Virus record (IMG/VR): IMGVR_UViG_3300036770_007547
Span: 124,001 to 188,000 of that record
DNA length: 64,000 bases
Strand: one strand, 5' to 3'
Shown here: positions 17,206 to 48,100 of the stretch, piece after piece
How the letters are laid out: every line of letters begins with the position of its first letter
Numbering within the stretch: the first letter of the stretch is position 1
Made by a program: the position numbers and the translations under genes
Notes under the pieces: model-generated
What the model was told of the DNA's origin: nothing
Database searches by the model: none
Seen by the model: the letters and a program-made list of their open reading frames with translations, nothing else

Positions 17206-20200
17206 CTAGTTAGCTTGTGCTTGCAGCAACTTCTCCACGGTGCGATTGTTGTCGCGCTGTAGTCCCACAAGATTTTCCAATTGCCGCACAAGATCGCTCA
17301 TGTTCTGCATCTCGACCGGTATTGGCGATGTGTTGCGTAGATTACCGGCAGGCCCCAACAACGATGAAGGTTCAGTTTCGGGAATTTCGGGTTTATTGGG
17401 TGTAGTTGTGTCGGTGTCCAGGCTTGCGTTCACTGTGGTGATGCGATTTTGTATTTCTGCCATTGCTTGTGGCACAAATTTATCAAAACCTCCAATGCTG
17501 TCACCAAACAAACCCATGCCTGAGATAGCTTCTTGACTTTTCTGATTGAACTGACCCATGCCTGTGCCGAGTCGATCAAATCCAAGACCCATGCCTTTGC
17601 TGAGTTCGGCTATGCCACGCTGCTGTGCTTCGTATTGCTCTCGAGTGGCCTTGCGACCATTCACGGTGTACTCTACTCGTTCAGTGGCAGCTTGTTTTTC
17701 AGCCAATCTCAGTTGATCTATGGCTTTTTTGCTGTCACCAAACAGTGTGTCCCAGATGCGATCAAAGAATCCTGGCTTGGCCGTGGGCGGCTCAGCCTTG
17801 TCAGTGCGCTGACCAAAAGTGGCAAATCCCTGTCCAAGGATACGTTTGAGTTCACCAAAAGGATCGTTGACAAATCTCATGGGTATGGATTTGCCTTGCA
17901 AAGGTATCACAGCTTCGGGACCGGCTTCACCTGCGATGCTGGGGCCTTGGGTGATGCCGCCCTTGGCCATGAAATTTTGGCTCAGTTGTTCTAGAGTTTG
18001 CAAAGGTTTGGCTTGGGTAGCGGCTGCCACATCAAGTCCACGATTCACAGCTTCCTGGGTGGACTGGGACAGGATCTCAGCCATCCGTTGCACTTCGGCA
18101 CGGAAACTTTGGCTGTCATTGCGTGATGTCTCAACGATCTCGCTTCTGGTCAGCAGTTTGAGTGTGCCATCAAGCCGTGAGATCTTTTTGATGAGAGCAT
18201 CATTGTCAAGACCTTTGATGTCCACTGGTATGCGCCGGCCATCAGGCAAGGGCACAAAGGCTTCGTTCTGGCCGGCCTCGGCGGCAGTGACCTGCACACC
18301 GCCTGGGCGGGCTGGTATCACCCCACCGTCACGCATGTAAATGTGCGGTGGATCACCAAAGCTGGCACCCCACTTGAATCCGTACTTGTTCAACAAACCC
18401 GACTGTGCCAGGAACGAAGCTTCGTTGGAATTGATGTCAACCGCCATGCCTTGCTGATGTTTGCTCATGCCAGGTGCAGCACGTGGTCTACCACCCGAGT
18501 TGATTCTCGCTTGTTCTTCCACGCTGCGGTAAGCTGAATTGATGCTGAGCACTCGGCCAGTGAGTTGCTGATACTCCGCGCCCATGTTGATCATGGCCTG
18601 CTGCACCGCGGGATTTAATTTTTCAAAATGGTTTTCGCTGCCGGTTCCAGATCCAAATCGGAACAGATCCTGCACACTTGATCCCACCGAAGGTGCTCCT
18701 CCACCACTGGCTCGCGGTATCTGAGCCTGTCCGCCTTTGGGAGCCGGCACAGCTGGCGCGGTGGCTGATCTTGTGCCCACATTGCCAGTAGCGGGAGCGG
18801 ATCTTTGCATGGCTCCCGCGGCCTGTGCAGGTTTGGCAAAATTCTGTTGGGCTTGTATCGTGGCAGATGCCAGTGCCTGCTGTTTTTCCTGTTCGGTGAC
18901 GCGAGCAAACAGTCCCTTGCTCTGACGCAGTATCTTGAGTTTCTGCTCAAACAGTTCCGTGCGTCTTTCCACGTATTTGCGATAGTTTTCGTTGTCTTTT
19001 TGGGCAAACTCAGCATCGTCAAACACATAGTCAAGGGATTTCTTGATCTCGTCGATCTCTTGCTGGCGGATAGCCGCCAAAGCATCGGCTTGATTTGATC
19101 GTTCGCCGGTCAGTTTTTGCCACCAAGACAAATCTTGGTCCACACGTGTCTGGGCTAGATCGCTGGCATCTTTGGCTGTGCGAGCTTGCTGTTGCTCGTG
19201 TTGAATCTGTATCTTGCGCTGGGCTGCGCCAGCACGATTGGCACGTTCGTAGAACTCGTTCCGTGCCTGTTCCTCGGCGGCCTGCTGGATGCGCATGCGC
19301 TCGAATTGCGCTTGATTCGGGCGCATTTTTTCCAAGCGACCTTGTTCGGTGCGTAGCATCTCCCGGCGAAGTTCGTTGATTCGTGATTGATACTGCTGAA
19401 ACCCTTCGCGATCGTTTTCGGCGAACGTCGCGTTGCTCCAGGTGGCCTCTTCGGTCACGCGAGTGCCACGTGTGATGGCTTTTTGTGATTCCAGTTGCTT
19501 GGCAGCTTGATCCACGGCCTGTGCTGCAAGTCCCGTTTGCTGCTGTTTGTTGCTCCAGAGGCGATCCCACCAAGATGCTTCTTTTTGGGCCTGTTCTATG
19601 GCCTGTTGTGTTGCTTGTTTCCGTGCATCGGTTTGTTTTTTCTCGCTGTCACCGGTGCCGCTCTCTTGCTTGTTGTTGCGTTGTTTTTTGTTGTCGACCA
19701 AGCCATAGTCAATGAGACCAAAGTAGCCGGCTGCGCCGCCCAGGGCCGCACCAATACCAGCACCTATGGCTGTCCCAACACCCGGAATGATGCTGCCTAT
19801 GGCAGCACCGGCTGTGCCCAGTGTGGTGGCCCCGGCTGCTGCGCCAACCTTTCCAGTTAGAGCGCCGGTCTTTTCGTCGGTGATTCCGCCCAGGGTGCCT
19901 GATTTTTGCAACACCGACGCATCGCTCAGCGTGGGTATGTCCATGCCAGTTTCTTTGGCCACGTGGCGTATGAAATCGTTGAGTGCGCCGGTGAATTGAT
20001 TCACAGCCTCAGCGGCTGCTGGCATGGCTGCAAACGCAAATGTATCCATCTGACGTGCCAGCTGATCCATGCTCTTCTGCGCATCCACAGTGCTGTCGGT
20101 CAAAGGATCGGTACCTTTGCGCATCTGAGCTTCTTGCTCGTTGGCCAGTCGCACCTGACCGTCAATGATCCGGGCGTTGACTAGATCGCTTTTCTGTGCA

Positions 20201-21858
20201 TAATTGGTCATGACACCGGCCGAGTCGCCCGTGGCTTTGGCGAGATCTCGGCTGGTCTGCATGTTGCGGGACGTGGCTTCTTGCAGTTCTTTGAAGGCCT
20301 GTATCTGATCAATGTGTCCGGCCTTGAGACGATTCATGATGTCCACCGATGCACCACCGGTGTCCACAAACAGTTTTTGTGCTGCTTCGGTGTTGACAAA
20401 TCCCGCTGCTACATCACGGAATCCTTGCCCCATCTCAGGTGCGGCCTTGCTGACCATGGTCTGGAAGTCCAGCATGGCCTTGGCTTCTTTTTCTCGGCCC
20501 TGGGCCACCATCTCGTCGTACTGAGCACGGAATCTAGCTTCGCCCAATGCAGCATCTTGCTGGGATTGGATTTCTTTGCGCTGCATGCCAGTGAGCTTGC
20601 TGAGTTGATCCAGCTCCTTGGCATACTGCATGGCACCTTGTGTGAGCTGTGCGTTGGTCTTGCGCTGGGAAAGACCCAGTCTGGTCTGTTGTGTTACAAA
20701 AGCACCAGCAGTGTCGCTGATGTCGCTGGCACTGAAGCCCAGGCGACGCAGTTGATCACCAAGATCGCTGCGAGTGATGTCGCCCACAAACTTGGAAAAT
20801 CGTTTGGCGCCCTCGCCCACGGTGCCACCAAATCGTGCCAGGGCCGAGGAATTTTCAGCCACAGCACGCTTGTAATCGTCGAGACTGACACCGCTTTCAA
20901 TGAACTGGCGTTGCAGTTCGGTCATGCCACCTGCGGTCAGCGCACCAACTGAACTGACATCACGGAACGCTTCTGCGGCTTTTTGCAGGCGGTCCAACAC
21001 AAACTTGGAACCTTCGGCGGCCAACTGTAGCGACCCCGAAAGAACAGTGCCCAATATGGGTATGCTTTCCAGCATCTTGCCCAAGGACTGGACCACGCCA
21101 TCGATCACGCCGTTGAACTGTGTGAATCCTTTGGTGCTGTCGCCTATCGACAGCAGGCCTTTGCCCAGGCCAACCATGGTCTTGCTGGCGCTTTCTGCGG
21201 CCGATTGCACACGGAGCATCGCCATCTGCACTGCCATCGCGGTCTGGGCATTCTTGGCCAAGCTCGGGCCCAAACGGCTCTTGATGATCATGTCGCCGAA
21301 ACGACCCAGGCGAGATTCTAAGCTGCTGTACTGGTCGATCTGCTTGATGCGTTCCTTGGCCAGCATCTGGCCATAATTGCGTTCATAGCCGATCTTTTCA
21401 TACTGATCTCTGAGTTCGGCTTGCAGAGCTTTCCAACGTTCGGCCTGTAGCTCTTCGGCCTTGCGCTTTTCATAGGCCGCACGTTCCTCGGCGCTCATGC
21501 GAGCCGTGCGAGCAGCATCTTGCTGGGCCTGTGCTAAAGACGCTGCCGAATCAGCGGCTTCCTGATCGGCTTTGGCTTTTTCGATCGAAGCATCGATCTC
21601 GTCTTTGACAGCGTCTGTGGCACGATCCACGGCCTTGACGAAATCTTGCAGTTCTCGATCGGCTTTGGCGCGTGTGACTGTGTCTTTCTTGATCTGGCTG
21701 CCCAAGCGTGCCAGCGCCTGCACTATGCGTTCGGTGCCACGATCAAATTTGCGAGCCGAGTCCTGGCCCGAGGCACCGGTGGTGCCCATTCTGCGAGCCA
21801 CTTGGACAAATTCTTTGAGCTGTGTTACTAGTTCGTCAATGTCATATTGATCGGCCAT
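17206..21858 (-). CDS. Tape-measure-like protein with a peptidase M15 (Zn D-Ala-D-Ala/L-Ala-D-Glu peptidase-type) domain
   Basis: Long Ala/Gln-rich helical ORF with a Gly-Ala hydrophobic stretch, SAYRS..EQ, SKH..GMAVD and DPPH motifs, and two GG...GEAGPEAVIPL-type motifs. Confidence 0.75.
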   Translation of the reverse strand: MADQYDIDELVTQLKEFVQVARRMGTTGASGQDSARKFDRGTERIVQALARLGSQIKKDTVTRAKADRELQDFVKAVDRATDAVKDEIDASIEKAKADQEAADSAASLAQAQQDAARTARMSAEERAAYEKRKAEELQAERWKALQAELRDQYEKIGYERNYGQMLAKERIKQIDQYSSLESRLGRFGDMIIKSRLGPSLAKNAQTAMAVQMAMLRVQSAAESASKTMVGLGKGLLSIGDSTKGFTQFNGVIDGVVQSLGKMLESIPILGTVLSGSLQLAAEGSKFVLDRLQKAAEAFRDVSSVGALTAGGMTELQRQFIESGVSLDDYKRAVAENSSALARFGGTVGEGAKRFSKFVGDITRSDLGDQLRRLGFSASDISDTAGAFVTQQTRLGLSQRKTNAQLTQGAMQYAKELDQLSKLTGMQRKEIQSQQDAALGEARFRAQYDEMVAQGREKEAKAMLDFQTMVSKAAPEMGQGFRDVAAGFVNTEAAQKLFVDTGGASVDIMNRLKAGHIDQIQAFKELQEATSRNMQTSRDLAKATGDSAGVMTNYAQKSDLVNARIIDGQVRLANEQEAQMRKGTDPLTDSTVDAQKSMDQLARQMDTFAFAAMPAAAEAVNQFTGALNDFIRHVAKETGMDIPTLSDASVLQKSGTLGGITDEKTGALTGKVGAAAGATTLGTAGAAIGSIIPGVGTAIGAGIGAALGGAAGYFGLIDYGLVDNKKQRNNKQESGTGDSEKKQTDARKQATQQAIEQAQKEASWWDRLWSNKQQQTGLAAQAVDQAAKQLESQKAITRGTRVTEEATWSNATFAENDREGFQQYQSRINELRREMLRTEQGRLEKMRPNQAQFERMRIQQAAEEQARNEFYERANRAGAAQRKIQIQHEQQQARTAKDASDLAQTRVDQDLSWWQKLTGERSNQADALAAIRQQEIDEIKKSLDYVFDDAEFAQKDNENYRKYVERRTELFEQKLKILRQSKGLFARVTEQEKQQALASATIQAQQNFAKPAQAAGAMQRSAPATGNVGTRSATAPAVPAPKGGQAQIPRASGGGAPSVGSSVQDLFRFGSGTGSENHFEKLNPAVQQAMINMGAEYQQLTGRVLSINSAYRSVEEQARINSGGRPRAAPGMSKHQQGMAVDINSNEASFLAQSGLLNKYGFKWGASFGDPPHIYMRDGGVIPARPGGVQVTAAEAGQNEAFVPLPDGRRIPVDIKGLDNDALIKKISRLDGTLKLLTRSEIVETSRNDSQSFRAEVQRMAEILSQSTQEAVNRGLDVAAATQAKPLQTLEQLSQNFMAKGGITQGPSIAGEAGPEAVIPLQGKSIPMRFVNDPFGELKRILGQGFATFGQRTDKAEPPTAKPGFFDRIWDTLFGDSKKAIDQLRLAEKQAATERVEYTVNGRKATREQYEAQQRGIAELSKGMGLGFDRLGTGMGQFNQKSQEAISGMGLFGDSIGGFDKFVPQAMAEIQNRITTVNASLDTDTTTPNKPEIPETEPSSLLGPAGNLRNTSPIPVEMQNMSDLVRQLENLVGLQRDNNRTVEKLLQAQAN

Positions 21859-21911: not shown

Positions 21912-22748
21912 ATGGAAACCAATCCCTTACGCCAGTATTTCCGGCAACCCGCCATCTATGTAAAATTGCCATCTGGCGGCAAATACTACCCCAAAGACAG
22001 CCTGGAGGTCACCGAAAACGGAGAGTATCCGGTGCTGCCCATGACCACCATGGACGAGATCACTTACCGTACACCAGATGCCTTGTTCAACGGCACTGCT
22101 TCGGTGAATGTGATCCAGAGCTGTGTGCCCAACATCAAAAATGCCTGGCACATGCCCAGCATGGACATTGACACTGTGCTGATAGCCATACGCATAGCCA
22201 GTTATGGTCATGAACTCAAACTGGACACCCAGTGCACCAAGTGTGCCAGCATCAACACGTTTGGCGTGGACTTGCGCACAGTGATGGAACGCATGCGTGC
22301 TCCGGACTACAGCCAGACCCAGACCCTGGGTGACCTCGAAATCTATTTCAAACCCATGGATTATCGGCAGATCAATGACAACAACATGATGCAGTTTGAA
22401 GACCAAAAGATGCTGCAAATGCTACAAGATGCCAACGTCAACGACGAGGACAAGCTGCGTCAAGTCGGTGATGTGCTGCGGAAAATCACCAGCATGACCA
22501 CACGGGCCTTGGCACAAAACATTGCCATGATCAAGACTCCCCAGGCCACAGTGACCGAGATCGAGTGGATCTCCGATTGGCTGGAAAACTGCGATCGTAG
22601 CACGTTTTCCAGCATACGCGATCACATCATCAACACCAAGCAGCAGGGCGAGCTACAGCCGCTGAAGATACAGTGCCCAGACTGCCAGAACGAGTACGAG
22701 CAACCATTCACCTTGGACATGGCAAATTTTTTCGCGGACGCCTCCTGA
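21912..22748 (+). CDS. Baseplate hub/tail assembly chaperone (gp26-like)
   Basis: YVKLPSGG, PMTTMDE, DIDTVLIAIRIASYG, two CxxC motifs and a C-terminal NFF. Confidence 0.8.
   Translation: METNPLRQYFRQPAIYVKLPSGGKYYPKDSLEVTENGEYPVLPMTTMDEITYRTPDALFNGTASVNVIQSCVPNIKNAWHMPSMDIDTVLIAIRIASYGHELKLDTQCTKCASINTFGVDLRTVMERMRAPDYSQTQTLGDLEIYFKPMDYRQINDNNMMQFEDQKMLQMLQDANVNDEDKLRQVGDVLRKITSMTTRALAQNIAMIKTPQATVTEIEWISDWLENCDRSTFSSIRDHIINTKQQGELQPLKIQCPDCQNEYEQPFTLDMANFFADAS
22724..22733 (+). other. Putative -1 ribosomal frameshift slippery site (A AAT TTT / T TTT TTC)
   Basis: Two overlapping in-frame X XXY YYZ heptamers 4-5 codons before the stop. The -1 frame is open to 22963. Confidence 0.7.
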
Positions 22749-22963
22749 CCCTAGATGCTGACCGCATCACCAAATGGATTGATCAGATGGAAAAGGAGGC
22801 CAAGATCATCCGCGCCGAAACTCTCAAAATGTGCTGGCACATGCGTGGTGGTCTCAGCTACACCGAGGCCATGAATCTCAGCCAGGGCGAACGCGACGAG
22901 ATCGCTACCATGATCAAAGATCATCTGGAAACCACCAAGAAAAGCGGATTACCTTACTTTTAA
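22724..22963 (+). CDS. gp51-like C-terminal chaperone module, probably expressed as a frameshift extension
   Basis: -1 frame KFFRGRLL...CWHMRGGLSYTEAMNLSQGER. The TAA overlaps the next ATG. An independent start at ATG 22787 is possible. Confidence 0.65.
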   Translation, partial: KFFRGRLLTLDADRITKWIDQMEKEAKIIRAETLKMCWHMRGGLSYTEAMNLSQGERDEIATMIKDHLETTKKSGLPYF

Positions 22964-23466
22964 TGGATCAAGTGCAGGCCAGAATTGATGTCACGAACTG
23001 GATCACTGGATTCGTGGAAAAACCTTCGCCGTTGTTGAATGGATGGCCGCCGTGTCCCTATGCTCGGCAGGCCCGGCTAGAGAATCGCGTGGATATACGC
23101 ATGGGATCTCACCCCTATCACGATCTCGAGCAGCTGGCAACACAGGGCTTGGGCGATCTAGACGTGGTGGTGCTGGTGTACGATCCCGGTCAATTTGATC
23201 TGCTCACGTTCCGCAAACACTGGCAATCGGCACAGCAACATCTGCATGCCCGTGGCCTTTTGGTGCTGGAAGATCATCCCAGCGAGCCCGAGATGGTGCG
23301 CGGAGTTTGCATGAATCAAGGCACCTGGGCTTTGTTGTTTGTGCAGGACCTCAAGCGGCTCAACGATGCTGCCCAGCAGCTGGCCACCAAAGGTTACTAT
23401 CACAATTGGCCGCGCGAGTATCTCAACGATCTGTTCCAAGGTCGTGCAGATCCAACACAGACTTGA
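22963..23466 (+). CDS. DUF1415-like protein (167 aa)
   Basis: TAATG-coupled start. W..GFVE...PCPYA and EDHP motifs resemble the DUF1415 CPFA/FHP motifs. Confidence 0.5.
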   Translation: MDQVQARIDVTNWITGFVEKPSPLLNGWPPCPYARQARLENRVDIRMGSHPYHDLEQLATQGLGDLDVVVLVYDPGQFDLLTFRKHWQSAQQHLHARGLLVLEDHPSEPEMVRGVCMNQGTWALLFVQDLKRLNDAAQQLATKGYYHNWPREYLNDLFQGRADPTQT

Positions 23467-37092: not shown

Positions 37093-38552
37093 TGTCGGTC
37101 AATGAATTATTGATAGAGATAAGGAAACTGCAAGACCAAAAGCAGACACTGTCTGCCGAAGTCAATTCGGCCACCCAAGCTGCATTGGAGGCCTATGATC
37201 GTGTCAAGGCATCCTACAACGATCGCAACGATCCACCTTACAACGCCGACGGACAAAACTTCGCTGACAAGCAAGCCTACACCAATTATCTGCGCTCGCG
37301 TTACAACACGGCCATGTATCAACGACGGGTGTTGCAGAATCAACTCAATGATGTGACACGACAGATATCGCAGCTAGAACAACAGATCAACGAGACCCGT
37401 ACCGATCAAGGCACCGGGGTCACTGCGTTGACTCTCAGAAACGGTGACGTGGTGGCAGTGTCCAGCCAAAGCCAGATCGAAAATCTCCTGGATCAAGGTC
37501 GTATCAGTGAGGCTCAGGCCGAAACCGCGAGATCGGCATTGACCGAGTCCCAACGCGGCCAACCCGTGGCCAAGGCCCGCGCCGATCAAGGACCGGGCAC
37601 AGTGTCAGCTGGCGAGATCGTGCTCGAAGATTCGCGAGCACGCGGAGAAAGTGCCACATATCAGGCTCCACCATTGCCGCAAGGATCGTCACAGCCCATA
37701 AACGAGGAAACGCTGGGAGAAAGCAATGCTGTTCCCAGCGTGTTGCCCCAGCCAACTCCGTTGTCTCCGCCAGCTGCATTGCCACCAGGCGGAGATCCTG
37801 ATCTAGCGGCCCAGGCCAGACCCGAACCTTCGGTGACCACCAGCTCGGGTGTGGACAGCCTAGAAACTTACTTGCCATCAAGCACCACAGTCAACTACAT
37901 TTACAAGGCCACGCTGTGTGTGAGCAAATTCAGCAAAGGGCGATTCACGCAGGATCTAGAAGGCGTGTTGTTGACTTTTCCCGGACAAGACATCGGCAAA
38001 GACACCGGTACTTTCCAGACTTCGGCCACGGTCGACTCTGCAAGAGAGTCACAAACACCCAATGCCACGAACAATCGTGCGGGCACTGGCACACAGGCCA
38101 ATCCTCAGACCACCAGCGTGGGTTCCAGCAACGGTATCAGCTATCAAGGCACGCCCACGGGTACCACCCAAGGCGTGGTCAAACCAGCCGCTGTGGATGC
38201 GTCGCAGAGCGGCGATCCAACTGCCACTCGTGGATCGATCAACCCACGCACGCTGGCCCCAGCAGCCACAGCCACACCGCCCACCAGTGACAGCCAACCC
38301 GTGGGCTTACAAGCACCACCGGCGGTGGGCACCAACAGCGCCGATGTGTCTATACAGGTATTCTTGACCAACGGCAGCGTGAGAACCGCGACCACGGAAG
38401 CACAGATACAAGAACTTTTTATACAAGGTCAGATAACTGCCCTCGAGCGAACACAGGCCATAAATGGCCTGCAGATCAAACAACGATCGGCGCAGAGTTC
38501 CAGCACAAACACAGTACCACAACGAATAGTAAAGGACGACAATGGCGGATAA
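37092..38552 (+). CDS. Baseplate-associated protein carrying the probable terminal strands of the hub domain
   Basis: TAATG-coupled. Coiled-coil N-terminus, low-complexity body and an internal YKAT..VSKFSKGRFTQDLEG motif. Confidence 0.55.
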   Translation: MSVNELLIEIRKLQDQKQTLSAEVNSATQAALEAYDRVKASYNDRNDPPYNADGQNFADKQAYTNYLRSRYNTAMYQRRVLQNQLNDVTRQISQLEQQINETRTDQGTGVTALTLRNGDVVAVSSQSQIENLLDQGRISEAQAETARSALTESQRGQPVAKARADQGPGTVSAGEIVLEDSRARGESATYQAPPLPQGSSQPINEETLGESNAVPSVLPQPTPLSPPAALPPGGDPDLAAQARPEPSVTTSSGVDSLETYLPSSTTVNYIYKATLCVSKFSKGRFTQDLEGVLLTFPGQDIGKDTGTFQTSATVDSARESQTPNATNNRAGTGTQANPQTTSVGSSNGISYQGTPTGTTQGVVKPAAVDASQSGDPTATRGSINPRTLAPAATATPPTSDSQPVGLQAPPAVGTNSADVSIQVFLTNGSVRTATTEAQIQELFIQGQITALERTQAINGLQIKQRSAQSSSTNTVPQRIVKDDNGG

Positions 38553-41244
38553 CATCATTCGCACCAAAGGACGTGGTGCCAGTTACAAGTTTGACAAAGG
38601 CGGTGTTCCCGCCGAATTTGGTCCCTATATTGGTGTGATCAAAAACAACATCGATCCCACGAGATCGGGTCGTTTGCAGGTGTACATCGAACAATTGGGC
38701 GGCAACAATCCTGATGATCCCAGTCTGTGGAGAACCGTGAGCTATTGCCCGCCTTTCTATGGTGTGACTCCCAGGAACAACGCCACAGGCAGTGCTGGTA
38801 CCGGTACCTACAAAGGCAATCAGCAGAGTTACGGCATGTGGTTCACTCCGCCCGACCTCGGCGTGCAAGTGATATGCTTTTTCGTGGCCGGAGATCCCAA
38901 TCAAGGCTATTGGTTGGCCTGTGTGCCTGATCCAGGTGTCACCCACATGATCCCGGCCATTGGTGCCAGCCGTAACTATATCACCAAAAACAGTCAGCAA
39001 GAAACTGAGATATCTGCTGCCGATGCAAAACAAATGCCGGTGGTAGAAATCAATCAGGACAATCCGGGTCTTGAAGAGAGTCCAAGATTTTTTGATCAAG
39101 AAAAACCCATACACGATTATGTTTACACAGTGTTGTTGAACCAAGGGTTGTTGGGTGACTATATCCGTGGTCCCATATCAAGCTCGGCACAACGCGAAAG
39201 TCCCAGCTCGGTGTTTGGGATGAGCAGTCCCGGACGACCCATCTACCAAGGTGTGAGCGGCATACAAAGCGAAGAAGAAGTGCTGGCCAAGGTGCAGTCG
39301 GGTGCCATCAAGATCGAAGATGTCAAGATTGAAGGACGACGTGGTGGACACAGCATCATCATGGACGATGGTGATCTGCGCGGTCGCGACAATCTCATAC
39401 GCATACGCACAGCCAAGGGACATCAGATCACCATGAGCGATGAAGCTGATTGTCTCTACATCATCGCAGCCAATGGTCAGACCTGGATCGAGCTGGGCAG
39501 CGAGGGAACTGTGGACGTGTATTCCACCAATTCAGTGAACGTGCGCAGCCAAGGTGAGATCAATCTCCATGCTGACAAAAACATCAACATCAATGCCGGT
39601 GAAAATCTCAACATCCGTGCCAAAAACATGCAGGTTGAGACCAAAGAAACATTGAACATGTCGGCCAGCACCGATTTCACTCTTTACAGCAAAACCAAAC
39701 TGGGCGTCAAAAGCGATGGTGGCATCAACCTGGATGCCAAGACCGGTGGCTGGAAAGCATCGGGTGGTCTCAAACTGCGCGGCAGCCGTATCGACCTCAA
39801 TGGAGGCAGCGCACCGGAATCTGTGACTGCTCCCAAGGTGTTGGTGGAATACAAGTTGGACGACACCAAGTTTGTGGCCGGCACCGGATGGCAAAAACAA
39901 GAAGGCACACTGGAAACCATAGTTCCGCGTGCGCCCACACACGAACCTTATCCCTATCACAATCGCGGCGTGCCCGTGGAAGTTGACCTGTCAGCATCGG
40001 CAAGTTCGCCACCGTCGCCGAGTGTGAGCCAGGCCCTGGGCACAGCATCTTCACAGGTACCATCGACCACGATCAATGCCGCAGATGTTCTCAGCACACC
40101 ACCGGCCAGTGTTGGTATCGGCAGCTTGGACAAATCACAAGTGAGTGGGCTGTTGGCCCAATCCAAGGCCATCACCAATCAAAACAGCAGTGTGTTCAGC
40201 ATCGACAAAGGCATCGGCGAATATGGACTGCAACCCGTGCAACTGGAATCCGCGGGCTATCTCAAACCCGGCACCATGCAACAGGCCTTGGCTGCAGTAC
40301 CATCGGCACCCACAGCCGCTGACATAGCCGAAGCCAATCGTCTCACCGGACTGGGACTCAATTATACCCCACAACAAGTGGCACAACAGCGCACGGTGCA
40401 GGAAATATTGTCTGCTCCCACGTCCTGGACTGGAAAGAGCGGAGTCAGCAGCTTCTCGTCGTTGTTGGGCGACAGCAATCTACAAAATCAAGTACAGCAA
40501 GGTCTATTGCAAAACAGCCTCTCTGGTCTGCAAACATCGGGCTTGGCCAAGGGCACAGAAAGTGCATCGGTGCTGGCACCATTGTTGGCAGTGGCATCAA
40601 AATTTGGAATAGCAAACACATCGTCGTTTGTGAAGGGTGTGGCCGCTCCAGACATCAACAGTGCCATGTCATCGTTGACTCGCAACTCTCAGTTTACCAC
40701 TTCTTTTATCACAGACAAGTTGGGCGCATTCACATCTTTGAGTCGGCGAGCAGCATCGGTGACCAATACTGTGAACCGAGCAGCGGTGGACTCAGCATTG
40801 ACAGCCAGCCTAGGCGATCCAAAAATCCCGGCTCCCAGTTACAAACCACAGGTACGCAAGGAAGATCAGCCGTCTCAGTTCCAAGATCAACGCGACTCGT
40901 TCCAAGACAAAGTAGATGAAGCATCGATATTTTTCAGCGGAGTCAAGACTCAGCTAGATGCTCTCTATGATTCGGCACAGGCCCTTAGATCCAGCGACAA
41001 CATCAGTGCATCCCAAGTCGACGCACTTGAAAGCCGTCTCACCTCAGTGCGCAATCTTTACAACAACAACCGGGAAAAATATCTGCAGCCCATACAAGAC
41101 GCAGTGAATTCGGCCCCCATCGAACTCCGCGATGAATTCAACAGCCAATATCTCGGTTACACGCGGCAAATACGCATATTACAGGGATTGGTGGCCAGCG
41201 TGCGCGAGATCATAGCTGAACTACGGGCAAGACAGACCACATAA
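38542..41244 (+). CDS. gp5: Baseplate central spike (gp5/VgrG-like)
   Basis: OB-fold DPTRSGRLQV...W...PPDLGVQV.C.F, GH.I.MDD / RTAKGH beta-helix repeats and PTHEPY..H motif. Confidence 0.85.
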   Translation: MADNIIRTKGRGASYKFDKGGVPAEFGPYIGVIKNNIDPTRSGRLQVYIEQLGGNNPDDPSLWRTVSYCPPFYGVTPRNNATGSAGTGTYKGNQQSYGMWFTPPDLGVQVICFFVAGDPNQGYWLACVPDPGVTHMIPAIGASRNYITKNSQQETEISAADAKQMPVVEINQDNPGLEESPRFFDQEKPIHDYVYTVLLNQGLLGDYIRGPISSSAQRESPSSVFGMSSPGRPIYQGVSGIQSEEEVLAKVQSGAIKIEDVKIEGRRGGHSIIMDDGDLRGRDNLIRIRTAKGHQITMSDEADCLYIIAANGQTWIELGSEGTVDVYSTNSVNVRSQGEINLHADKNININAGENLNIRAKNMQVETKETLNMSASTDFTLYSKTKLGVKSDGGINLDAKTGGWKASGGLKLRGSRIDLNGGSAPESVTAPKVLVEYKLDDTKFVAGTGWQKQEGTLETIVPRAPTHEPYPYHNRGVPVEVDLSASASSPPSPSVSQALGTASSQVPSTTINAADVLSTPPASVGIGSLDKSQVSGLLAQSKAITNQNSSVFSIDKGIGEYGLQPVQLESAGYLKPGTMQQALAAVPSAPTAADIAEANRLTGLGLNYTPQQVAQQRTVQEILSAPTSWTGKSGVSSFSSLLGDSNLQNQVQQGLLQNSLSGLQTSGLAKGTESASVLAPLLAVASKFGIANTSSFVKGVAAPDINSAMSSLTRNSQFTTSFITDKLGAFTSLSRRAASVTNTVNRAAVDSALTASLGDPKIPAPSYKPQVRKEDQPSQFQDQRDSFQDKVDEASIFFSGVKTQLDALYDSAQALRSSDNISASQVDALESRLTSVRNLYNNNREKYLQPIQDAVNSAPIELRDEFNSQYLGYTRQIRILQGLVASVREIIAELRARQTT

Positions 41245-41675: not shown

Positions 41676-44600
41676 ATGGCCAAGACCACAAGACAGACCG
41701 CGATATTTGGTGTAGAGGATTGGAAAAGACTCTACCAGACCTATCGCGAAGCCGATTTCCAGAGCTACGATTTCGAGACTCTGCGCAAGAGCTTCGTTGA
41801 TTATCTGCGTTTGTACTATCCCGAAAGCTTCAACGACTACATCGAAAGCAGCGAATTCATTGCCTTGCTGGATGTGATGGCGTTCATGGGACAGGCCCTG
41901 GCCTTCCGCAACGATCTCAATGCACGTGAAAACTTCCTAGACACCGCCGAGCGCCGAGACAGCGTGGTGAGACTGGCCAATCTCGTGGGTTATACACCCA
42001 AGCGCAACGTGCCAGCCGAAGGCTACATCAAGATCATGAGTGTGAGCACCTCGGAAAGCATCACCGATTTCAACGGAGTCAATCTCAGCAACGTGACCAT
42101 AGACTGGGATGATCCTGCCAACCCCAATTGGCTTGAACAGTTTACTACGGTGGTAAACGCGGCCCTGGTGGACAGTCAAAAGTACGGGCGTCCCGGAAAT
42201 CGCCAAACCATACAGGGCGTGGACACCGATGAATACACCATCAATCTGGTCCCGGGATTCTTGCCAGTGATCCCTTATGTGTCCATCGTTGACGGTGTCA
42301 GCATGCCATTTGAAGTGGTCAGTGCCACCAGTACCGGAAAAAATTTCATTTACGAGCCTGCACCACAACCGTCAGGCGCATTCAACATGCTGTATCGCAA
42401 CGACGGCCAAGGGTTTGGCAGCAACGACACTGGGTTCTTCTTTTTGTTCAAGCAAGGCGTGTTGCAAAATCAAGACTTCAATCTCGCCGAAGCTTTGCCC
42501 AACCGAGTGGTCAACATCAACATCGAAGGTTGTAATCAAAACGATCATTGGCTGTTCAAGCTCGATGATGTGGGCAGCATTGAAAGCGAATGGCAGTACG
42601 TGGACAATGTTTTTGCTGGTGCCACCGAACAGCTGGCGCCGGATCAGCGCAAATTCTACACCATCACCAGCCGCACCAATGATCAGATCTCGCTGAGATT
42701 CGGTGACGGTGTGTTCAGCAGCATACCCGTGGGTATCTTCCGTGCCTATGTGCGTGCATCAAATGGATTGGAATACATCATCAATCCCGAAGAGATGCAA
42801 AACATACTGTTGCCCATCAGCTACATCAGTCGTCGTGGTCGCTTGGAAACCATTACATTCACTTGCAGCGTGATGTCGCCGGTCACAAATGCTCAAGCCC
42901 GCGAAAGCATCGCTGAAATCAAGCAGCGTGCCCCGGCCCGTTACTACACGCAGAATCGTATGGTCAACGGCGAGGACTACAACAATTTTCCATTTACACA
43001 ATTCAACTCGATCATCAAGAGCAAGGCTGTGGCTCGCAGTTCTATTGGAACCAGCCGCTACGTAGATCTCACCGACATCACTGGCAAATATTCCAGCACC
43101 AATATATTTGGCAGTGATGGCATGATCTATCGAGAAAATACACTGCCTTCAGTGGAGTTTACCTGGCTCAATCGCAACGACATCGTTGACACCATCAAGA
43201 ATTCTGTGGAACCGTTGATCAGCAGCCGAGGCATGCTGCAATTTTACTATCAGAATTTCCCAAGACCTTCTCTGTCTGTGCTCAATGCCGGGTGGCAGCA
43301 AAGCACCACATTGGTGAACGAGACCACGGGATTTTTCTATCAAGGCAACAGCACGAGACCGCTGCCTATAGGTCCTTACACCAGCAACAATGCGCAATAC
43401 GTGACTGTGGGCAGTCTAGTAAAGTTTGTTCCGCCTTCGGGCTACTTCTTTGATGCCAACAATCGACTGCGTGCTGGAACACCCACACGTGCCGATGAAA
43501 AATTGGTGGTCTGGGCCACAGTGACCAACGTGGTGCTTGAAGGGACCAATCAAGGTCTGGGCAACCTACCCAATGGTGTAGGTCCAGTCACGCTCAACAA
43601 CTTTGTGCCCACGGGCGCTCTAGCCGAATTGGTGATTCCCAAGTTCTCCATAGATCTTCCCGACAGCCTCGAGCAACAGATGATCCAACAGATCGAACTG
43701 TATCGTAATTTTGCCATTGGATACGACAATCTCAACAGCACTTGGTATCTCATCATTTCCAGCAATCTCAACGAAAATGCTGTGTTCAGCCGTACCTATG
43801 CAAAAAACACCCAGGGTCTCAATCTAGATGCATCCTGGTTGGTGCAATTTACCACCGACGGTGTCACATACACTGTGAACAGTCGCAGCCTTGACTACAA
43901 ATTTGCCTCGGTGTTGCAGACACGATTCTTCTACGCAGGATCCGGACAAGTCTATGACAACAAGACCGGCAGCGTGATCAACGATTTCGTCAATGTGCTC
44001 AAGGTCAATGCCCTGCCCGACAGCAATCTCCCATTGCCCACCGACATCGTCATGGACATCATTGGACAGCCGTTGCAAAGCGATGGTTTTGTCAACGACT
44101 ACGAAGTGGTGATCAGCTACAAAGACAGTGACGCAGATGGTGTGGCCGACGATCCTGATTTCTTTGAAACCATAGTGGCTCCCAATGTCAGTCCGGCCAA
44201 CAAACTGGTGTTCTTCCAGCAGGTCACTGACTTTGACAATCTCGAACGCTACCTGCCTTTGACTCCCGGCGAAGTCAACAGCGGATTTGACACTGTGCAA
44301 GACATTGAGCTGGTAAAGGCCGAGTTCATCAACGGGCAAATATTTTATGCACGCACCCAAAACACGTTCTGGGAACTCAAGATCGAACTGATCAATGGAT
44401 TGATCACACGCACTTTGGTACCTCGTTTGGATTTCCTGGCACGCATTGGGCGCGGCGATCTCGCTTTCCAATACCGCCACAACAGTCCATTGACCAATGT
44501 GATTGATCCCGGAACCACGAACATCATTGATCTTTACTTGGTCACCGACAGCTACTACACACAGTATCAAAACTACATCAAAGACACCACTGGTTCCGTG

Positions 44601-45191
44601 CCCGAGCCAGCACCGCCCACCATCTCGGACCTTACTGCGGCCTACAACACACTCAACGAATACAAGATGGTGTCAGACAACATCGTTCTCAATTCAGTGA
44701 CGTTCAAGCCTTTGTTTGGTGCCAAGGCAGCCACCGAGCTGCGCGGTATCATCAAAGTGGTGCGTGCCCAAAACACCGTGGCTTCGGACAGTGAAATCAA
44801 GAGCCAGGTCATATCAAACATCAACAACTATTTCACCATCGACAAATGGGACTTTGGCGACAGCTTTTTCTTCTCGGAACTGGCAGCATATTTGCACGAG
44901 CGCCTGGGCTCCATCATCAGTTCAGTGGTGCTGGTGCCATTGAATCCGCTCAAAACTTTTGGAGACTTGTACGAAATACGTTCAGCGCCCAACGAAATTT
45001 TCGTCAGCGCAGCCACAGTCAGCGATGTGGAAGTCATTGATGCTCTCACACAAACCAACATCCGTAGTCAGACCAGCGTGGCTGGTTTGTATCCGGTAAG
45101 TACATTGGGATCACCGTCACAGACGGTGGGTCAAGCTGGAACCACACCGTTGGTGACTGGTAACAGCGGAACAGATTACGGGACTATTTGA
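41676..45191 (+). CDS. gp6: Baseplate wedge subunit (gp6)
   Basis: DFETLR, ENFLDTAERRDSV..LA...GY.P, FGDG.F and ESI.EIK..AP.....QNR.V..EDY motifs. Confidence 0.9.
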   Translation: MAKTTRQTAIFGVEDWKRLYQTYREADFQSYDFETLRKSFVDYLRLYYPESFNDYIESSEFIALLDVMAFMGQALAFRNDLNARENFLDTAERRDSVVRLANLVGYTPKRNVPAEGYIKIMSVSTSESITDFNGVNLSNVTIDWDDPANPNWLEQFTTVVNAALVDSQKYGRPGNRQTIQGVDTDEYTINLVPGFLPVIPYVSIVDGVSMPFEVVSATSTGKNFIYEPAPQPSGAFNMLYRNDGQGFGSNDTGFFFLFKQGVLQNQDFNLAEALPNRVVNINIEGCNQNDHWLFKLDDVGSIESEWQYVDNVFAGATEQLAPDQRKFYTITSRTNDQISLRFGDGVFSSIPVGIFRAYVRASNGLEYIINPEEMQNILLPISYISRRGRLETITFTCSVMSPVTNAQARESIAEIKQRAPARYYTQNRMVNGEDYNNFPFTQFNSIIKSKAVARSSIGTSRYVDLTDITGKYSSTNIFGSDGMIYRENTLPSVEFTWLNRNDIVDTIKNSVEPLISSRGMLQFYYQNFPRPSLSVLNAGWQQSTTLVNETTGFFYQGNSTRPLPIGPYTSNNAQYVTVGSLVKFVPPSGYFFDANNRLRAGTPTRADEKLVVWATVTNVVLEGTNQGLGNLPNGVGPVTLNNFVPTGALAELVIPKFSIDLPDSLEQQMIQQIELYRNFAIGYDNLNSTWYLIISSNLNENAVFSRTYAKNTQGLNLDASWLVQFTTDGVTYTVNSRSLDYKFASVLQTRFFYAGSGQVYDNKTGSVINDFVNVLKVNALPDSNLPLPTDIVMDIIGQPLQSDGFVNDYEVVISYKDSDADGVADDPDFFETIVAPNVSPANKLVFFQQVTDFDNLERYLPLTPGEVNSGFDTVQDIELVKAEFINGQIFYARTQNTFWELKIELINGLITRTLVPRLDFLARIGRGDLAFQYRHNSPLTNVIDPGTTNIIDLYLVTDSYYTQYQNYIKDTTGSVPEPAPPTISDLTAAYNTLNEYKMVSDNIVLNSVTFKPLFGAKAATELRGIIKVVRAQNTVASDSEIKSQVISNINNYFTIDKWDFGDSFFFSELAAYLHERLGSIISSVVLVPLNPLKTFGDLYEIRSAPNEIFVSAATVSDVEVIDALTQTNIRSQTSVAGLYPVSTLGSPSQTVGQAGTTPLVTGNSGTDYGTI

Positions 45192-48100
45192 TGGCCAAGC
45201 GCAGGACCATAGACTTACTTCCTGAGATTTTCCAGACAGACACCAATCGTCAGTTCCTGTCGGCCACCTTGGATCAGATGATCCAAGAGCCCAGCGTACA
45301 ACGAATACAAGGTTATGTGGGACGTCGCATCGGTCCAGGAGTGATACCCAGCGATCCATATGTCAACGAGCCCACCAAATCTCGCACCGATTACCAGCTC
45401 GAGCCCGGTGTCATATTCCTCAAACCCGACACCTCCACTGCCACTGACACCATCACCTATCCCGGCATGTTGGATGCTCTGCGATTGGACAACGGAATCA
45501 CGGTTCGCCAGGATCGCATGTTCGAGAATCAGTACTACGCCTATGATCCCTTTGTAGATCTCGACAAGTTCAGCAACTACAGCCAGTACTTTTGGTTGAG
45601 CGAAGGGCCCGATGCGGTCGATGTCAGCAGCACTGCCATCCCCATCACCGATGATTTCACAGTCACACGCGGCAGCAACGACTACACTTTTTCAGGAGTG
45701 GCCGGCGAAAATCCCATATTGACCCTGGCACGTGGCGGAACCTATAATTTTGCGGTAAATCAAAACGGTCACAACTTTTGGATCCAAACAGCACCGGGAG
45801 TGAACGGTGTGAATCCCGACTTCCCCAATCTCAGTACTCGAGATGTGCTGGGCGTGATCAACAACGGCGAAGACAACGGCACAGTGCAGTTCAACGTGCC
45901 CTACAAAGACGCACAGAATTTCTACTATGGTCTCAACACCATGGAGCCTGTGGATCTCTTGGGTCAGGGATTCAAGTTCAACGAGATCAACAACATCTAT
46001 GTCAACGATTTCTTGGCCAAGCATCCCCAGGGCATCGACGGTATCACCGAACTCAACGGACTCACCATTGTTTTCCCCAGTCGCATCGGCGATGCCGATG
46101 ATGGCGGTTGGCGCATAGACACACAGTTTGATCCACTGGTGCGTACCACGCCCGATCGTATTGGCACCTACTTCAGCTATGATCTAGTCACGAGAACCGT
46201 GGCCGATCGCACGTCAGAGACTCGCAGCTTTGACTTGGTCACACGCACCGTGCCCAATCAAGTGGTGCAAGAAGTGGGATTCGATGCCACAGTGCTACCG
46301 TTTGACGAGCAGCCATTTGGAGCCACCACCAATGTCGAGACCGGCGTACCTGATCCCTTGGATGGCACACCCGGCACATTTGACTTTGATCCCGAGGACA
46401 GCAGCACCGATGATTGGGGCTTTGACGCTCCTGAAATCGAAGTCACTGCCGGTCCCACCGATCCCTTGGATGGCACACCGGGCACGTTTGACGTCAGTGG
46501 ATTTGAAGAGCCCCAGGTCCTGTCAGTATCGGGTCCACCCGATCCACTGGACGGTGCCGACGGTAGCTATGACAGCCTACCCTATGATCAAGACACCGAC
46601 ATCGTGTTGCGAGCACAGCGTTACAGCGTGTGGCAGATACAGTATGTCGAGGATGCCGACGGCGAATACTACATGACACTGCGCAGCGTGGCACAGATAC
46701 CCAATCTGTCGCGTTTCCGCATCAGCTACGGTGCCGAATACAGCAGCACCGAATGGTGGAAAGATGGTTCAGGATTCTTGGATCGTGTTCCGCCCTTGAG
46801 TGCCGTGCTAGATGAGCTGTGGTATCAGGATTCCACCAATCCCGATATTTTTGGATTGATACGCTTGGTGGATGTGGCCGATGCCAACCCCATCAATGTC
46901 GACGACATAGTGGGGCAGACCAAATACACCAGTCCCAATGGTGTGATATTCACCAATGGACTCAAGATTAAGTTTCGAGGTCCCACCAATCCAGTTGAAT
47001 ATCAAAATCAAGAATTCTATGTAGAAGGTGTGGGCACTGGTCCAGGCAACGAACTCAAAGTGGGATTCGTTGATGGCGAAGCCTACTTTGGGCCGTTCCA
47101 TGTGTTTGAGAATCGACGCATGACCGGTGCCGAACACAGCGACGAGGTGTTGCAGCAGTACATCTATGACACGCTGGAGGAAAGCATAGCCGCCGCTGGA
47201 TCGGCTGGTCCGTTGTTGGCCACCCTAGGAACCGATCCCCAGCCCGGAGTGATCAAGAACAACGGCATCAAATTGATACCGGTCACAGACATGGTCACTC
47301 CTGAGACTTACACTCTCAACGAACCCGTGCCCTACAGCGACTTTGGATTTGATGTTGGCAACTTTGATGCCACGCTGAATGCTCCGTTGTTGCCTGACTA
47401 TATCACCATGAGTCGAGCAAGTCCGGATCAGAACCCCTGGAGTCGCAGCAATCGATGGTTCCACAAAGATGTGATCGCTTACAGCGCCGAGCTCAACAAT
47501 TCAGTACCAGTCTATGACAACGAGTATCGAGCGCAACGTCCCATTATCGAATTCCGTGCCGGACTCAAGCTCTGGAATTTTGGTTCGCAGTCACAGGGAC
47601 AAGTCAATGTGATCGATTTCCTGGAAACTGATGCTCTCAGCAACATCAATGGGCAGATCGGTTATGGCTATGATGGATACGAATTCGTGGAAGGCACCCG
47701 TGTGGTGTTTGCGTCGGACCGAGATCGAGAAGTTCGCAATCGGATCTATCGTGTCACGTTTGTTGACAGCAACGATGACGGCAATTCTCTGATAAGGCTG
47801 GTGGCCGAACCCAATGGCATAGCACAAGCCAATCAAACTTTGGTGTGTTTGAACGGTGTCCAACAACAAGGACAGGCATTCTGGTTTGACGGAAACAATT
47901 GGATACTGGGGCAACAAAAAACATCCATCAACCAGTCTCTGTTGTTTGATGTGTTTGATTCCGACGGTATCAGTTTTGGAAATCAAACTCGTTATCCCAG
48001 CAACACGTTTGTGGGCAATCGACTGTTTGGATATCGGCGCGACGAAACTGCCACAGTGGACTCGGTGCTGGGCTTTGGACTGACCTATCAAAACATCGAA

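What the first reader, a model, noticed from the sequence alone, without database searches (positions are those of the whole stretch)
22719..22963. Lambda G/GT-style -1 frameshift joining gp26-like and gp51-like chaperones
Seen: ATG GCA AAT TTT TTC GCG GAC GCC TCC TGA contains two overlapping, correctly phased slippery heptamers (A AAT TTT and T TTT TTC). The -1 frame continues for ~78 codons into the conserved-looking W.MRGG.SY.EAMNLS..ER module, and there is no obvious SD before its first ATG. The gene is adjacent (divergent) to the tape-measure gene. Established: long-tailed phages make two tail-assembly chaperones by frameshifting next to the tape measure gene, but T4 itself is not a textbook case. 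Inference: 278-aa and ~350-aa products, making this pair the G/GT equivalent in this phage group.
Basis: partly seen in the sequence, partly recalled or inferred. Interest (0 to 1): 0.7.

Follow-up and report, generated by a model that had tools for sequence, protein, structure and literature searches.

The report
Frameshift makes long hub chaperone
This jumbo phage has one T4 gp26/gp51-type baseplate-hub chaperone gene that almost certainly makes a short and a long protein through a conserved -1 ribosomal frameshift, where T4 uses two separate genes; the evidence is strong, but the principle was published for T4-like phages in 2022.

Summary
ORF 21912-22748 (278 aa, Pfam PF12322, the family of both T4 gp26 and gp51) ends ...GCA AAT TTT TTC GCG GAC GCC TCC TGA. 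The -1 frame stays open for 76 more codons, to 22963.

In 50 related loci (39 distinct sequences, 20 lineages, including PA5oct, the Rak2-like phage CBB, Atu_ph07 and XacN1), every one has:
- an in-phase T_TTT_TTY heptamer 1-11 codons before the stop;
- a -1 frame extension of 70-79 codons, alignable from the first residue after the slip.

Only the second heptamer, T_TTT_TTC (22727-22733), is conserved; A_AAT_TTT is not. Several orthologues have no usable start codon for the extension, and PA5oct has none at all.

Sister lineages encode the same long form as one uninterrupted 319-351 aa protein, next to a separate short gene. T4 does the same with gp26 (short) and gp51 (long). A predicted helix begins 4-7 nt after the heptamer and shows compensatory changes in a sister group.

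The best reading is a programmed -1 frameshift giving 278-aa and 350-aa hub/tail assembly chaperones. Tape-measure adjacency is plausible but unproven, and no fold link to lambda-type chaperones was found. Vladimirov et al. 2022 already described this logic for T4-like phages, so this is a new, unannotated member of a known kind.

The parts
21912..22748 (+). 0-frame ORF, the short form (278 aa): gp26/gp51-family hub assembly chaperone domain, ending ...MANFFADAS*
   Evidence: Pfam PF12322 at 56.2 bits (cut-off 24.5) and phrog_150 'baseplate hub'. AlphaFold2 model with mean pLDDT 88.5. It is the only PF12322 gene in the 222,775-nt record.
22727..22733 (+). Conserved slippery heptamer T_TTT_TTC (U_UUU_UUC): tandem Phe codons preceded by a wobble T
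   Evidence: Present and in phase in 50 of 50 orthologous loci (48 TTTTTTC, 2 TTTTTTT). Codon-usage test.
22724..22730 (+). Overlapping heptamer A_AAT_TTT, in phase here but not conserved. A slip here would give the same protein.
   Evidence: Orthologues have AGT, ACT, CAT, GCT or TCT before the T run.
22733..22963 (+). -1 frame extension: 76 codons (RGRLLTLDADR...WHMRGG...ER...LPYF) plus TAA. With residues 1-274 it gives a 350-aa long form.
   Evidence: Aligns almost without gaps from its first residue across 18-19 lineages. Natural uninterrupted long forms match the conceptual fusion end to end. The match to the gp51 C-terminal extension has E 1.8e-4 to 3.2e-4.
22746..22748 (+). 0-frame stop (TGA), four codons after the heptamer
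   Evidence: 0-frame tails after the heptamer are 1-11 codons long and not conserved across lineages.
22740..22746 (+). 5' arm (GCCUCCU) of the predicted stimulatory helix, 6 nt after the heptamer
   Evidence: Minimum-free-energy and centroid folds. It is the best duplex partner within +/-500 nt. Invariant in 9 of 9 distinct sequences of the window's subgroup.
22794..22800 (+). 3' arm (AGGAGGC) of the predicted helix, closing a 47-nt loop
   Evidence: The equivalent 16-bp helix in a sister group has 4 pairs with compensatory changes. It is 95.5% paired, against 30-56% in slid controls.
17206..21858 (-). Divergent neighbour: 1550-aa protein rich in Ala, Gln and Gly, with a VanY/M15 peptidase domain. 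Candidate tape measure or hub protein, unproven.
   Evidence: Pfam VanY and a weak hit to a tape-measure phrog. Syntenic homologues in relatives, with weak similarity to CBB_251, a virion protein by mass spectrometry. No similarity to T4 gp29.
22963..23466 (+). Next gene (167 aa, unknown function). Its ATG overlaps the TAA of the extension frame (TAATG).
   Evidence: phrog_28122, phrog_10325. The protein start MDQVQ... is conserved in relatives.

Best explanation
One gene gives two hub/tail assembly chaperones. Most ribosomes read 21912-22748 and release a 278-aa protein equivalent to T4 gp26. A fraction slips back one base on U_UUU_UUC (22727-22733), with tRNA-Phe in both the P and A sites. 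These ribosomes continue in the -1 frame for 76 codons and make a 350-aa protein (residues 1-274 plus RGRLL...PYF), equivalent to T4 gp51.

The slip is probably stimulated by an mRNA helix (22740-22746 pairing with 22794-22800) that starts 6 nt after the heptamer.

Shown by sequence comparison: the conserved heptamer, the frame relationship, the conserved extension without its own start, and the natural fused and split versions. Inferred: the ribosomal mechanism, the efficiency, and the roles of the two forms. By analogy with lambda G/GT and T4 genetics, both forms would act in hub, tape-measure and tube assembly and would be absent from virions.
For: 1. 50 of 50 loci (39 distinct sequences, 20 lineages) have an in-phase T_TTT_TTY, a -1 offset and a 70-79 codon extension.
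2. The -1 frame is conserved from the first residue after the slip (FF|R.RLL..PEEI). The 0-frame tails vary in length and sequence.
3. The PA5oct extension has no ATG, GTG or TTG at all. The first candidates lie at codon 31 in L004 and L005 (codon 33 in L006) and at codon 37 in L053. Gene callers start the small ORF at many different positions.
4. The wobble T plus TTT is kept against codon usage.
5. Complete genomes of Atu_ph07, PA5oct, XacN1 and CBB each have one PF12322 gene, while T4 has two.
6. About 19 of the 150 best matches to the extension profile are uninterrupted 319-351 aa proteins with the extension at their C-terminus. They align end to end with the conceptual fusion (E 1e-81). 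In the two cases looked up, each sits directly after a separate short PF12322 gene.
7. The fusion profile is colinear with the gp51 family to its C-terminus (E 8.6e-9). The gp26 family always ends three residues after the FF.
8. A downstream helix is predicted. In 17 of 26 lineages the best partner of the 22 nt after the heptamer lies 28-67 nt downstream. A sister group shows compensatory changes.
9. The source-sample contig is identical, and relatives' contigs show no indels at the T run.
10. The XacN1 and RaK2 homologues were not detected in virions. Leiman et al. 2010 list T4 gp26 and gp51 as hub assembly chaperones.
Against: There is no direct evidence for the product: no proteomics, ribosome profiling or reporter data for this or any related phage could be examined.

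The window's own helix is short (7 bp) and its z-score is modest (-1.4). Its arms are invariant in the subgroup, so it shows no covariation of its own. The helix register differs between lineages, and the Rak2-like phages gave no clear long-range partner.

In Atu_ph07 and Phosso an ATG overlaps the stop (ATGA), so reinitiation is possible there.

The extension-only match to gp51 is modest (E about 2-3e-4, probability 39-48%). No fold similarity to solved chaperones was found.
Confidence: 0.85

Rival explanations
1. Transcriptional slippage: RNA polymerase adds one U in the U6/U7 run. A subset of mRNAs then encodes the long form in one frame, giving the same protein as ribosomal frameshifting.
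For: The conserved element is a homopolymer run (T6, or T7 in XacN1 and Xoo-sp13). Selection for run length would also preserve the wobble T. The protein product would be identical, so sequence data cannot separate the two.
Against: Six or seven residues is short for efficient polymerase slippage (established knowledge). The run ends in C in 48 of 50 loci rather than being lengthened. A downstream helix with the 4-7 nt spacing typical of ribosomal -1 sites is predicted and covaries.
Confidence: 0.08
2. Two independent genes: the 278-aa protein plus a small protein (about 59 aa from ATG 22787, or 96 aa from GTG 22673) translated from its own start. The -1 offset would be a by-product of gene overlap.
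For: Gene callers and GenBank records annotate small separate ORFs in several relatives. The window has an ATG at 22787.
Against: Amino-acid conservation extends 18 codons upstream of ATG 22787, right to the slip site. PA5oct has no start codon in the 73-codon ORF, and L053 has none before codon 37. No Shine-Dalgarno sequence precedes 22787 or 22673. Called starts are inconsistent. Natural fused long forms exist.
Confidence: 0.04
3. Termination-reinitiation coupling at the 0-frame stop (ATGA-type overlap), producing a separate extension polypeptide.
For: Atu_ph07 and Phosso have ATG overlapping TGA, directly after the heptamer. The window has CTGA at the same place.
Against: Most lineages have no start codon at or near the stop. 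The conserved FFR.RLL residues lie upstream of the stop in the window and in many others.
Confidence: 0.02
4. Assembly or sequencing error in a homopolymer, or a decaying gene.
For: Homopolymer runs are error-prone.
Against: The same arrangement occurs in 50 loci from isolates and metagenomes sequenced independently. An independent assembly of the source run is identical, and relatives' contigs show no indel at the run.
Confidence: 0.01

Closest known systems
T4 gp26 / gp51 hub assembly chaperones (PF12322), proposed as the tail assembly chaperone pair of T4-like phages by Vladimirov, Gautam & Davidson, Virology 2022, 566:9-15. The paper is not held in the library and is known here through citing papers.
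   Same: Same protein family. The short form ends just after the conserved FF, as gp26 does. The long form is colinear with gp51, including its C-terminal extension. Homologues were not found in virions, and T4 gp26 and gp51 are listed as chaperones.
   Different: T4 encodes the two forms in two divergent genes without a slippery site (gp26 has TTC TTT). Here one gene plus a -1 frameshift does the job. The extension is 76 aa, against about 48 aa in gp51. Sequence identity to T4 is very low (about 15-19% over the profile alignments).
Lambda gpG/gpGT and the conserved -1 frameshift of tail assembly chaperones (Levin et al. 1993; Xu, Hendrix & Duda 2004; cited from established knowledge)
   Same: Two products share an N-terminus. 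The long one is made by a -1 slip on an X_XXY_YYZ heptamer near the end of the short ORF. The role is in tail assembly, and the products are expected to be absent from virions.
   Different: No sequence or fold similarity was detected. The gene is not directly upstream of, or co-oriented with, a proven tape measure gene. It is divergent from a candidate. The heptamer is U_UUU_UUC rather than lambda's G_GGA_AAG.
Tandem short + long PF12322 genes in uncultured relatives (L054, L055)
   Same: Same family, same synteny (portal, large protein, then the chaperone genes), and the same extension, joined at the same residue.
   Different: There is no frameshift. The long form is one ORF with a single F at the junction (..S.F-R.K[IL]). 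The short copy has lost the Cys pairs. One short copy keeps a T_TTT_TTC whose -1 frame stops after three codons.
E. coli dnaX -1 frameshift (A_AAA_AAG with a downstream stem-loop)
   Same: A bacterial-type -1 site with a homopolymeric heptamer and a downstream helix at a short spacing.
   Different: dnaX frameshifting shortens the product and also uses an upstream Shine-Dalgarno-like stimulator. No such upstream element is evident here.

Membership tests
Pfam PF12322 T4_baseplate (T4 gp26/gp51 family) | Profile match above the curated cut-off | tested here: met
   56.2 bits against a cut-off of 24.5, residues 55-274 on profile positions 38-218 of 219. T4 gp26 and gp51 both match the same model.
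Pfam PF12322 T4_baseplate (T4 gp26/gp51 family) | Conserved C-terminal FF motif after the second Cys pair | tested here: met
   F273 and F274 are invariant, and C108/C111 and C255/C258 are nearly invariant. The gp26 family ends EFFKLL*.
Pfam PF12322 T4_baseplate (T4 gp26/gp51 family) | Assembly factor that is not part of the virion | not testable with these tools
   Literature only. The XacN1 ORF317 and RaK2 homologues were not detected by virion MS/MS. T4 gp26 and gp51 are listed as hub assembly chaperones.
T4 gp51 (long paralogue) | C-terminal extension beyond the PF12322 domain, homologous to that of gp51 | tested here: inconclusive
   Extension profile against the gp51 family: E 1.8e-4 to 3.2e-4, probability 39-48%, C-terminus aligned to C-terminus. 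The fusion profile is colinear to the end of gp51 (E 8.6e-9) and its score rises from 47 to 67 when the extension is added. The extension shows no match to the gp26 family.
Programmed -1 ribosomal frameshift site | In-phase X_XXY_YYZ heptamer conserved in orthologues | tested here: met
   T_TTT_TTY in 50 of 50 loci. Codon-usage test about 10^-11.
Programmed -1 ribosomal frameshift site | Conserved -1 ORF that lacks its own initiation signal and is conserved up to the slip site | tested here: met
Programmed -1 ribosomal frameshift site | Stimulatory RNA structure 5-9 nt downstream | tested here: inconclusive
   A helix is predicted at a 6-nt spacing in the window. Covariation supports a 16-bp helix in a sister group. 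The register is not conserved family-wide, and the Rak2-like phages are unclear.
Programmed -1 ribosomal frameshift site | Trans-frame protein detected | not testable with these tools
   No proteomic or ribosome profiling data could be examined. Only DNA metagenome runs hold the window.
Lambda G/GT-type tail assembly chaperones | Short and long products sharing an N-terminus through a -1 frameshift | tested here: met
   Inferred from sequence as above. Both forms also exist as separate genes in sister lineages and in T4.
Lambda G/GT-type tail assembly chaperones | Located immediately upstream of, and co-oriented with, the tape measure gene | tested here: not met
   The neighbouring gene is divergent, and its tape-measure identity is unproven.
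Lambda G/GT-type tail assembly chaperones | Sequence or fold similarity to known tail assembly chaperones | tested here: not met
   No PDB sequence match. Foldseek and VIA-align gave only generic helical-hairpin matches. A missing match does not prove that the folds differ.
Lambda G/GT-type tail assembly chaperones | Binds the tape measure (short part) and the tube protein (extension) | not tested
   No complex prediction was run. The tape measure partner is not identified with confidence.

The most novel reading that the evidence does not exclude
The -1 frameshift is the ancestral and still dominant way of expressing the gp26/gp51-type hub chaperones across the large clade of Rak2-, PA5oct-, Atu_ph07- and XacN1-like jumbo phages and their many uncultured relatives. 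It is missed in every public annotation inspected. It was replaced at least twice independently by gene duplication (tandem in some lineages, divergent in T4). It uses a lineage-specific long-range helix that constrains the protein sequence of the extension. If the 2022 paper did not cover these phages or the RNA element, this would be the first family-wide description of a recoding event that turns into a gene duplication.
Probability: 0.3. Interest if true: 0.6.

Novelty: new member of a known kind. Interest (0 to 1): 0.45.

Why it matters
It explains how jumbo phages with a T4-type baseplate get both hub/tail chaperone forms from a single gene.

It also corrects annotation in many genomes. 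None of the nine related GenBank phage records inspected carries a joined CDS; the extension is either unannotated or called as a small hypothetical ORF.

It gives a clean natural series for studying how programmed frameshifting and gene duplication replace each other: frameshift, then tandem genes, then divergent genes.

Cultured phages (PA5oct, CBB, Atu_ph07, XacN1) make it directly testable. Its value is limited because the gp26/gp51 chaperone logic, and poly-T slippery sites in 'TAC-N' genes of T4-like phages, are already in the literature.

Tried and rejected
- A megablast of the region against phage genomes found nothing. The phage is known only from a subsurface metagenome.
- Pfam, PHROGs and NCBIfam gave no family for the extension alone. 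Rfam gave nothing for 22500-23100.
- hhalign of the extension profile against the single T4 gp51 sequence gave nothing. Only the comparison with a gp51 family profile did.
- The search for related loci with a 13-sequence alignment failed for lack of conserved stretches.
- The A_AAT_TTT heptamer was rejected as the conserved site.
- ATGA-type reinitiation was rejected as a general explanation. It is possible only in Atu_ph07 and Phosso.
- An upstream Shine-Dalgarno-like stimulator was looked for by eye and not seen.
- The AGGAGG in the 3' arm was considered as a ribosome binding site. It was rejected because no start codon follows within about 30 nt.
- Structure searches (Foldseek on PDB for both models, VIA-align wide for the window model) gave no informative match. 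Fold-level kinship to lambda-type chaperones remains unsupported.
- T4 gp29 shows no similarity to the 1550-aa neighbour.
- No complex prediction was attempted, because the tape measure partner is uncertain.

Full report
**The sequence.** Two heptamers are in phase: A_AAT_TTT (22724-22730) and T_TTT_TTC (22727-22733). The -1 frame is open from 22601 to TAA at 22961-22963. After a slip on the Phe-Phe codons it encodes 76 residues (RGRLLTLDADR...WHMRGG...ER...LPYF). The products would be 278 aa and 274 + 76 = 350 aa. A slip on either heptamer gives the same protein.

**The protein family.** The ORF matches Pfam PF12322 (T4_baseplate, 56 bits, cut-off 24.5) and phrog_150 'baseplate hub'. T4 gp26 (208 aa) and T4 gp51 (249 aa) both match PF12322 over their first ~200 residues. 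gp51 carries about 48 extra C-terminal residues. Leiman et al. 2010 (PMC3004832) list both as hub assembly chaperones.

**The genome.** The window lies in a 222,775-nt viral record from a subsurface metagenome, estimated 64% complete, with a single PF12322 gene. Its relatives are jumbo myoviruses: Atu_ph07, Phosso, PA5oct, XacN1 and the Rak2-like phages.

**Comparative test.** I collected 50 loci, giving 39 distinct sequences in 20 lineages at 70% identity of the extension:
- nine isolates (Atu_ph07, Phosso, Xoo-sp13, PA5oct, Serratia BF, XacN1, Salmonella 7t3, Escherichia BF17, CBB);
- IMG/VR and metagenome contigs.

Every locus has an in-phase T_TTT_TTC (48 loci) or T_TTT_TTT (2 loci), 1-11 codons before the 0-frame stop. 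Every locus also has a -1 frame extension of 70-79 codons, 76 in most.
- The codon before the T run varies (AAT, AGT, ACT, CAT, GCT, TCT), so A_AAT_TTT is not conserved, but its third base is always T.
- Against each gene's own codon usage, the naive probability of that pattern is about 10^-11 over 19 representatives. This overstates independence.
- T4 gp26 keeps the FF residues but encodes them as TTC TTT.
- 0-frame tails are variable (A, E, V, RES, EQSF, ADAS, VQGFSSQNQKK and others). The -1 frame aligns almost without gaps from its first residue (FF|R.RLL..PEEI...).

**No independent start.**
- The PA5oct extension (73 codons) contains no ATG, GTG or TTG.
- In L004 and L005 the first candidate start is codon 31 (codon 33 in L006), and in L053 it is codon 37.
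- In the window, 18 conserved codons precede ATG 22787, and no Shine-Dalgarno sequence precedes it.
- A profile of the extension found 658 database proteins. The small ones start at many different profile positions, which is what gene callers produce when there is no real start.
- None of the nine GenBank records inspected annotates a joined CDS.

**Natural fused and split versions.** About 19 of the top 150 hits are 319-351 aa proteins with the extension at the extreme C-terminus. Their junction reads ..S.F-R.K[IL]. Their profile aligns end to end with the conceptual frameshift product (E 1e-81, 333 columns). In both contigs looked up, the long gene directly follows a separate short PF12322 gene (294 or 296 aa) that ends two residues after FF. 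One contig shows the same synteny as the window: portal, large protein, then the chaperone genes. Complete genomes of Atu_ph07, PA5oct, XacN1 and CBB each have one PF12322 gene, while T4 has two.

The family therefore shows three architectures:
- a single gene plus a frameshift;
- tandem short and long genes;
- T4's divergent genes 26 and 51.

This argues that both forms are needed.

**Relation to gp51.**
- The fusion profile is colinear with the gp51 family up to its C-terminus (probability 95.7%, E 8.6e-9).
- The short form alone scores lower against gp51 and aligns over only 88 columns.
- The extension alone matches the gp51 C-terminus at E 1.8e-4 to 3.2e-4, and matches nothing in gp26.
- The gp26 family always stops three residues after FF.
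- gp26 and gp51 are much closer to each other (E 1.9e-19) than either is to the jumbo-phage protein. This fits a duplication within the T4 lineage.

**RNA.** In the window, GCCUCCU (22740-22746, 6 nt after the heptamer) pairs with AGGAGGC (22794-22800).
- Both arms are invariant in 9 of 9 distinct subgroup sequences, while the spacer varies.
- In a sister group a 16-bp helix at the same place has 4 pairs with compensatory changes and 95.5% of cells paired, against 30-56% when the partner is slid.
- In 17 of 26 lineages the best duplex partner, within +/-500 nt, of the 22 nt after the heptamer lies 28-67 nt downstream.
- The register differs between lineages, and the Rak2-like phages are unclear. 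The stimulator is therefore supported but not proven for the window.

**Checks against artefact.** An independent assembly of the source run matches 22400-23100 without any difference. Contigs of relatives in four metagenomes pile up on 22688-22759 with no indel at the T run.

**Function.**
- The XacN1 and RaK2 homologues were not detected in virions.
- The CBB mass-spectrometry list includes CBB_251, the divergent neighbour, but not the chaperone gene.
- The window's divergent neighbour (1550 aa, rich in Ala, Gln and Gly, with a VanY domain) is syntenic in relatives and weakly similar to CBB_251. It shows only a weak hit to a tape-measure phrog and no similarity to T4 gp29. 'Next to the tape measure' is therefore plausible but unproven.
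- AlphaFold2 models of the short form (pLDDT 88.5) and of a gp51-like protein (pLDDT 91.1) have no informative PDB neighbour. The link to lambda G/GT rests on genetic logic, not on fold.

**Prior knowledge.** PRFect (PMC10885494) and the phage Adele paper (PMC12846349) both cite Vladimirov, Gautam & Davidson 2022. According to the first, some T4-like phages carry one short and one long fused chaperone gene instead of frameshifting. According to the second, poly-T slippery sequences occur in 'TAC-N' genes of T4-like phages. I could not read the paper itself. No paper in the library links jumbo phages, baseplate hub genes and frameshifting.

**Verdict.** It is a new, unannotated member of a known kind.

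Noticed in passing
window 45188-60148 (+): A single ORF of 4986 aa, matching phrog_10938 'virion structural protein' over residues 1100-1979. It directly follows a gp6-like baseplate wedge gene (41676-45191) and lies about 4 kb downstream of a gp5-like hub/lysozyme gene (38542-41244).
   Followed up: partly
window 17206-21858 (-): A 1550-aa protein rich in Ala, Gln and Gly, with a VanY/M15 D-Ala-D-Ala carboxypeptidase domain (residues about 1080-1175). It lies directly upstream of the portal gene and divergent from the chaperone gene. It could be a tape measure or hub protein with a cell-wall hydrolase.
   Followed up: partly
window 22961-22965: The ATG of the next gene (22963-23466, unknown function) overlaps the TAA of the -1 frame extension (TAATG). 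Its start is therefore positioned relative to the frameshifted frame, not the 0 frame.
   Followed up: no
L055:1-2709: In a related uncultured phage the T4-type portal gene carries Pfam hits for an intein (Intein_splicing) and, faintly, an HNH endonuclease.
   Followed up: no
L054:1680-1704: The short gene of a tandem short + long pair still ends TCT TTT TTC AAT GAC TAA. This is a T_TTT_TTC whose -1 frame stops after three codons, possibly a relic of the frameshift site.
   Followed up: partly
window 22688-22759 and 22832-22879: In four metagenomes, contigs of related phages at 80% identity or more align almost only to these two short stretches (the slip region and the W.MRGG codons). These are the most nucleotide-conserved parts of the locus.
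   Followed up: partly
window 22740-22746 / 22794-22800: The two helix arms are an anti-Shine-Dalgarno-like CCUCCU and a perfect Shine-Dalgarno AGGAGG. No start codon follows the AGGAGG within about 30 nt. Whether this resemblance matters is unknown.
   Followed up: no
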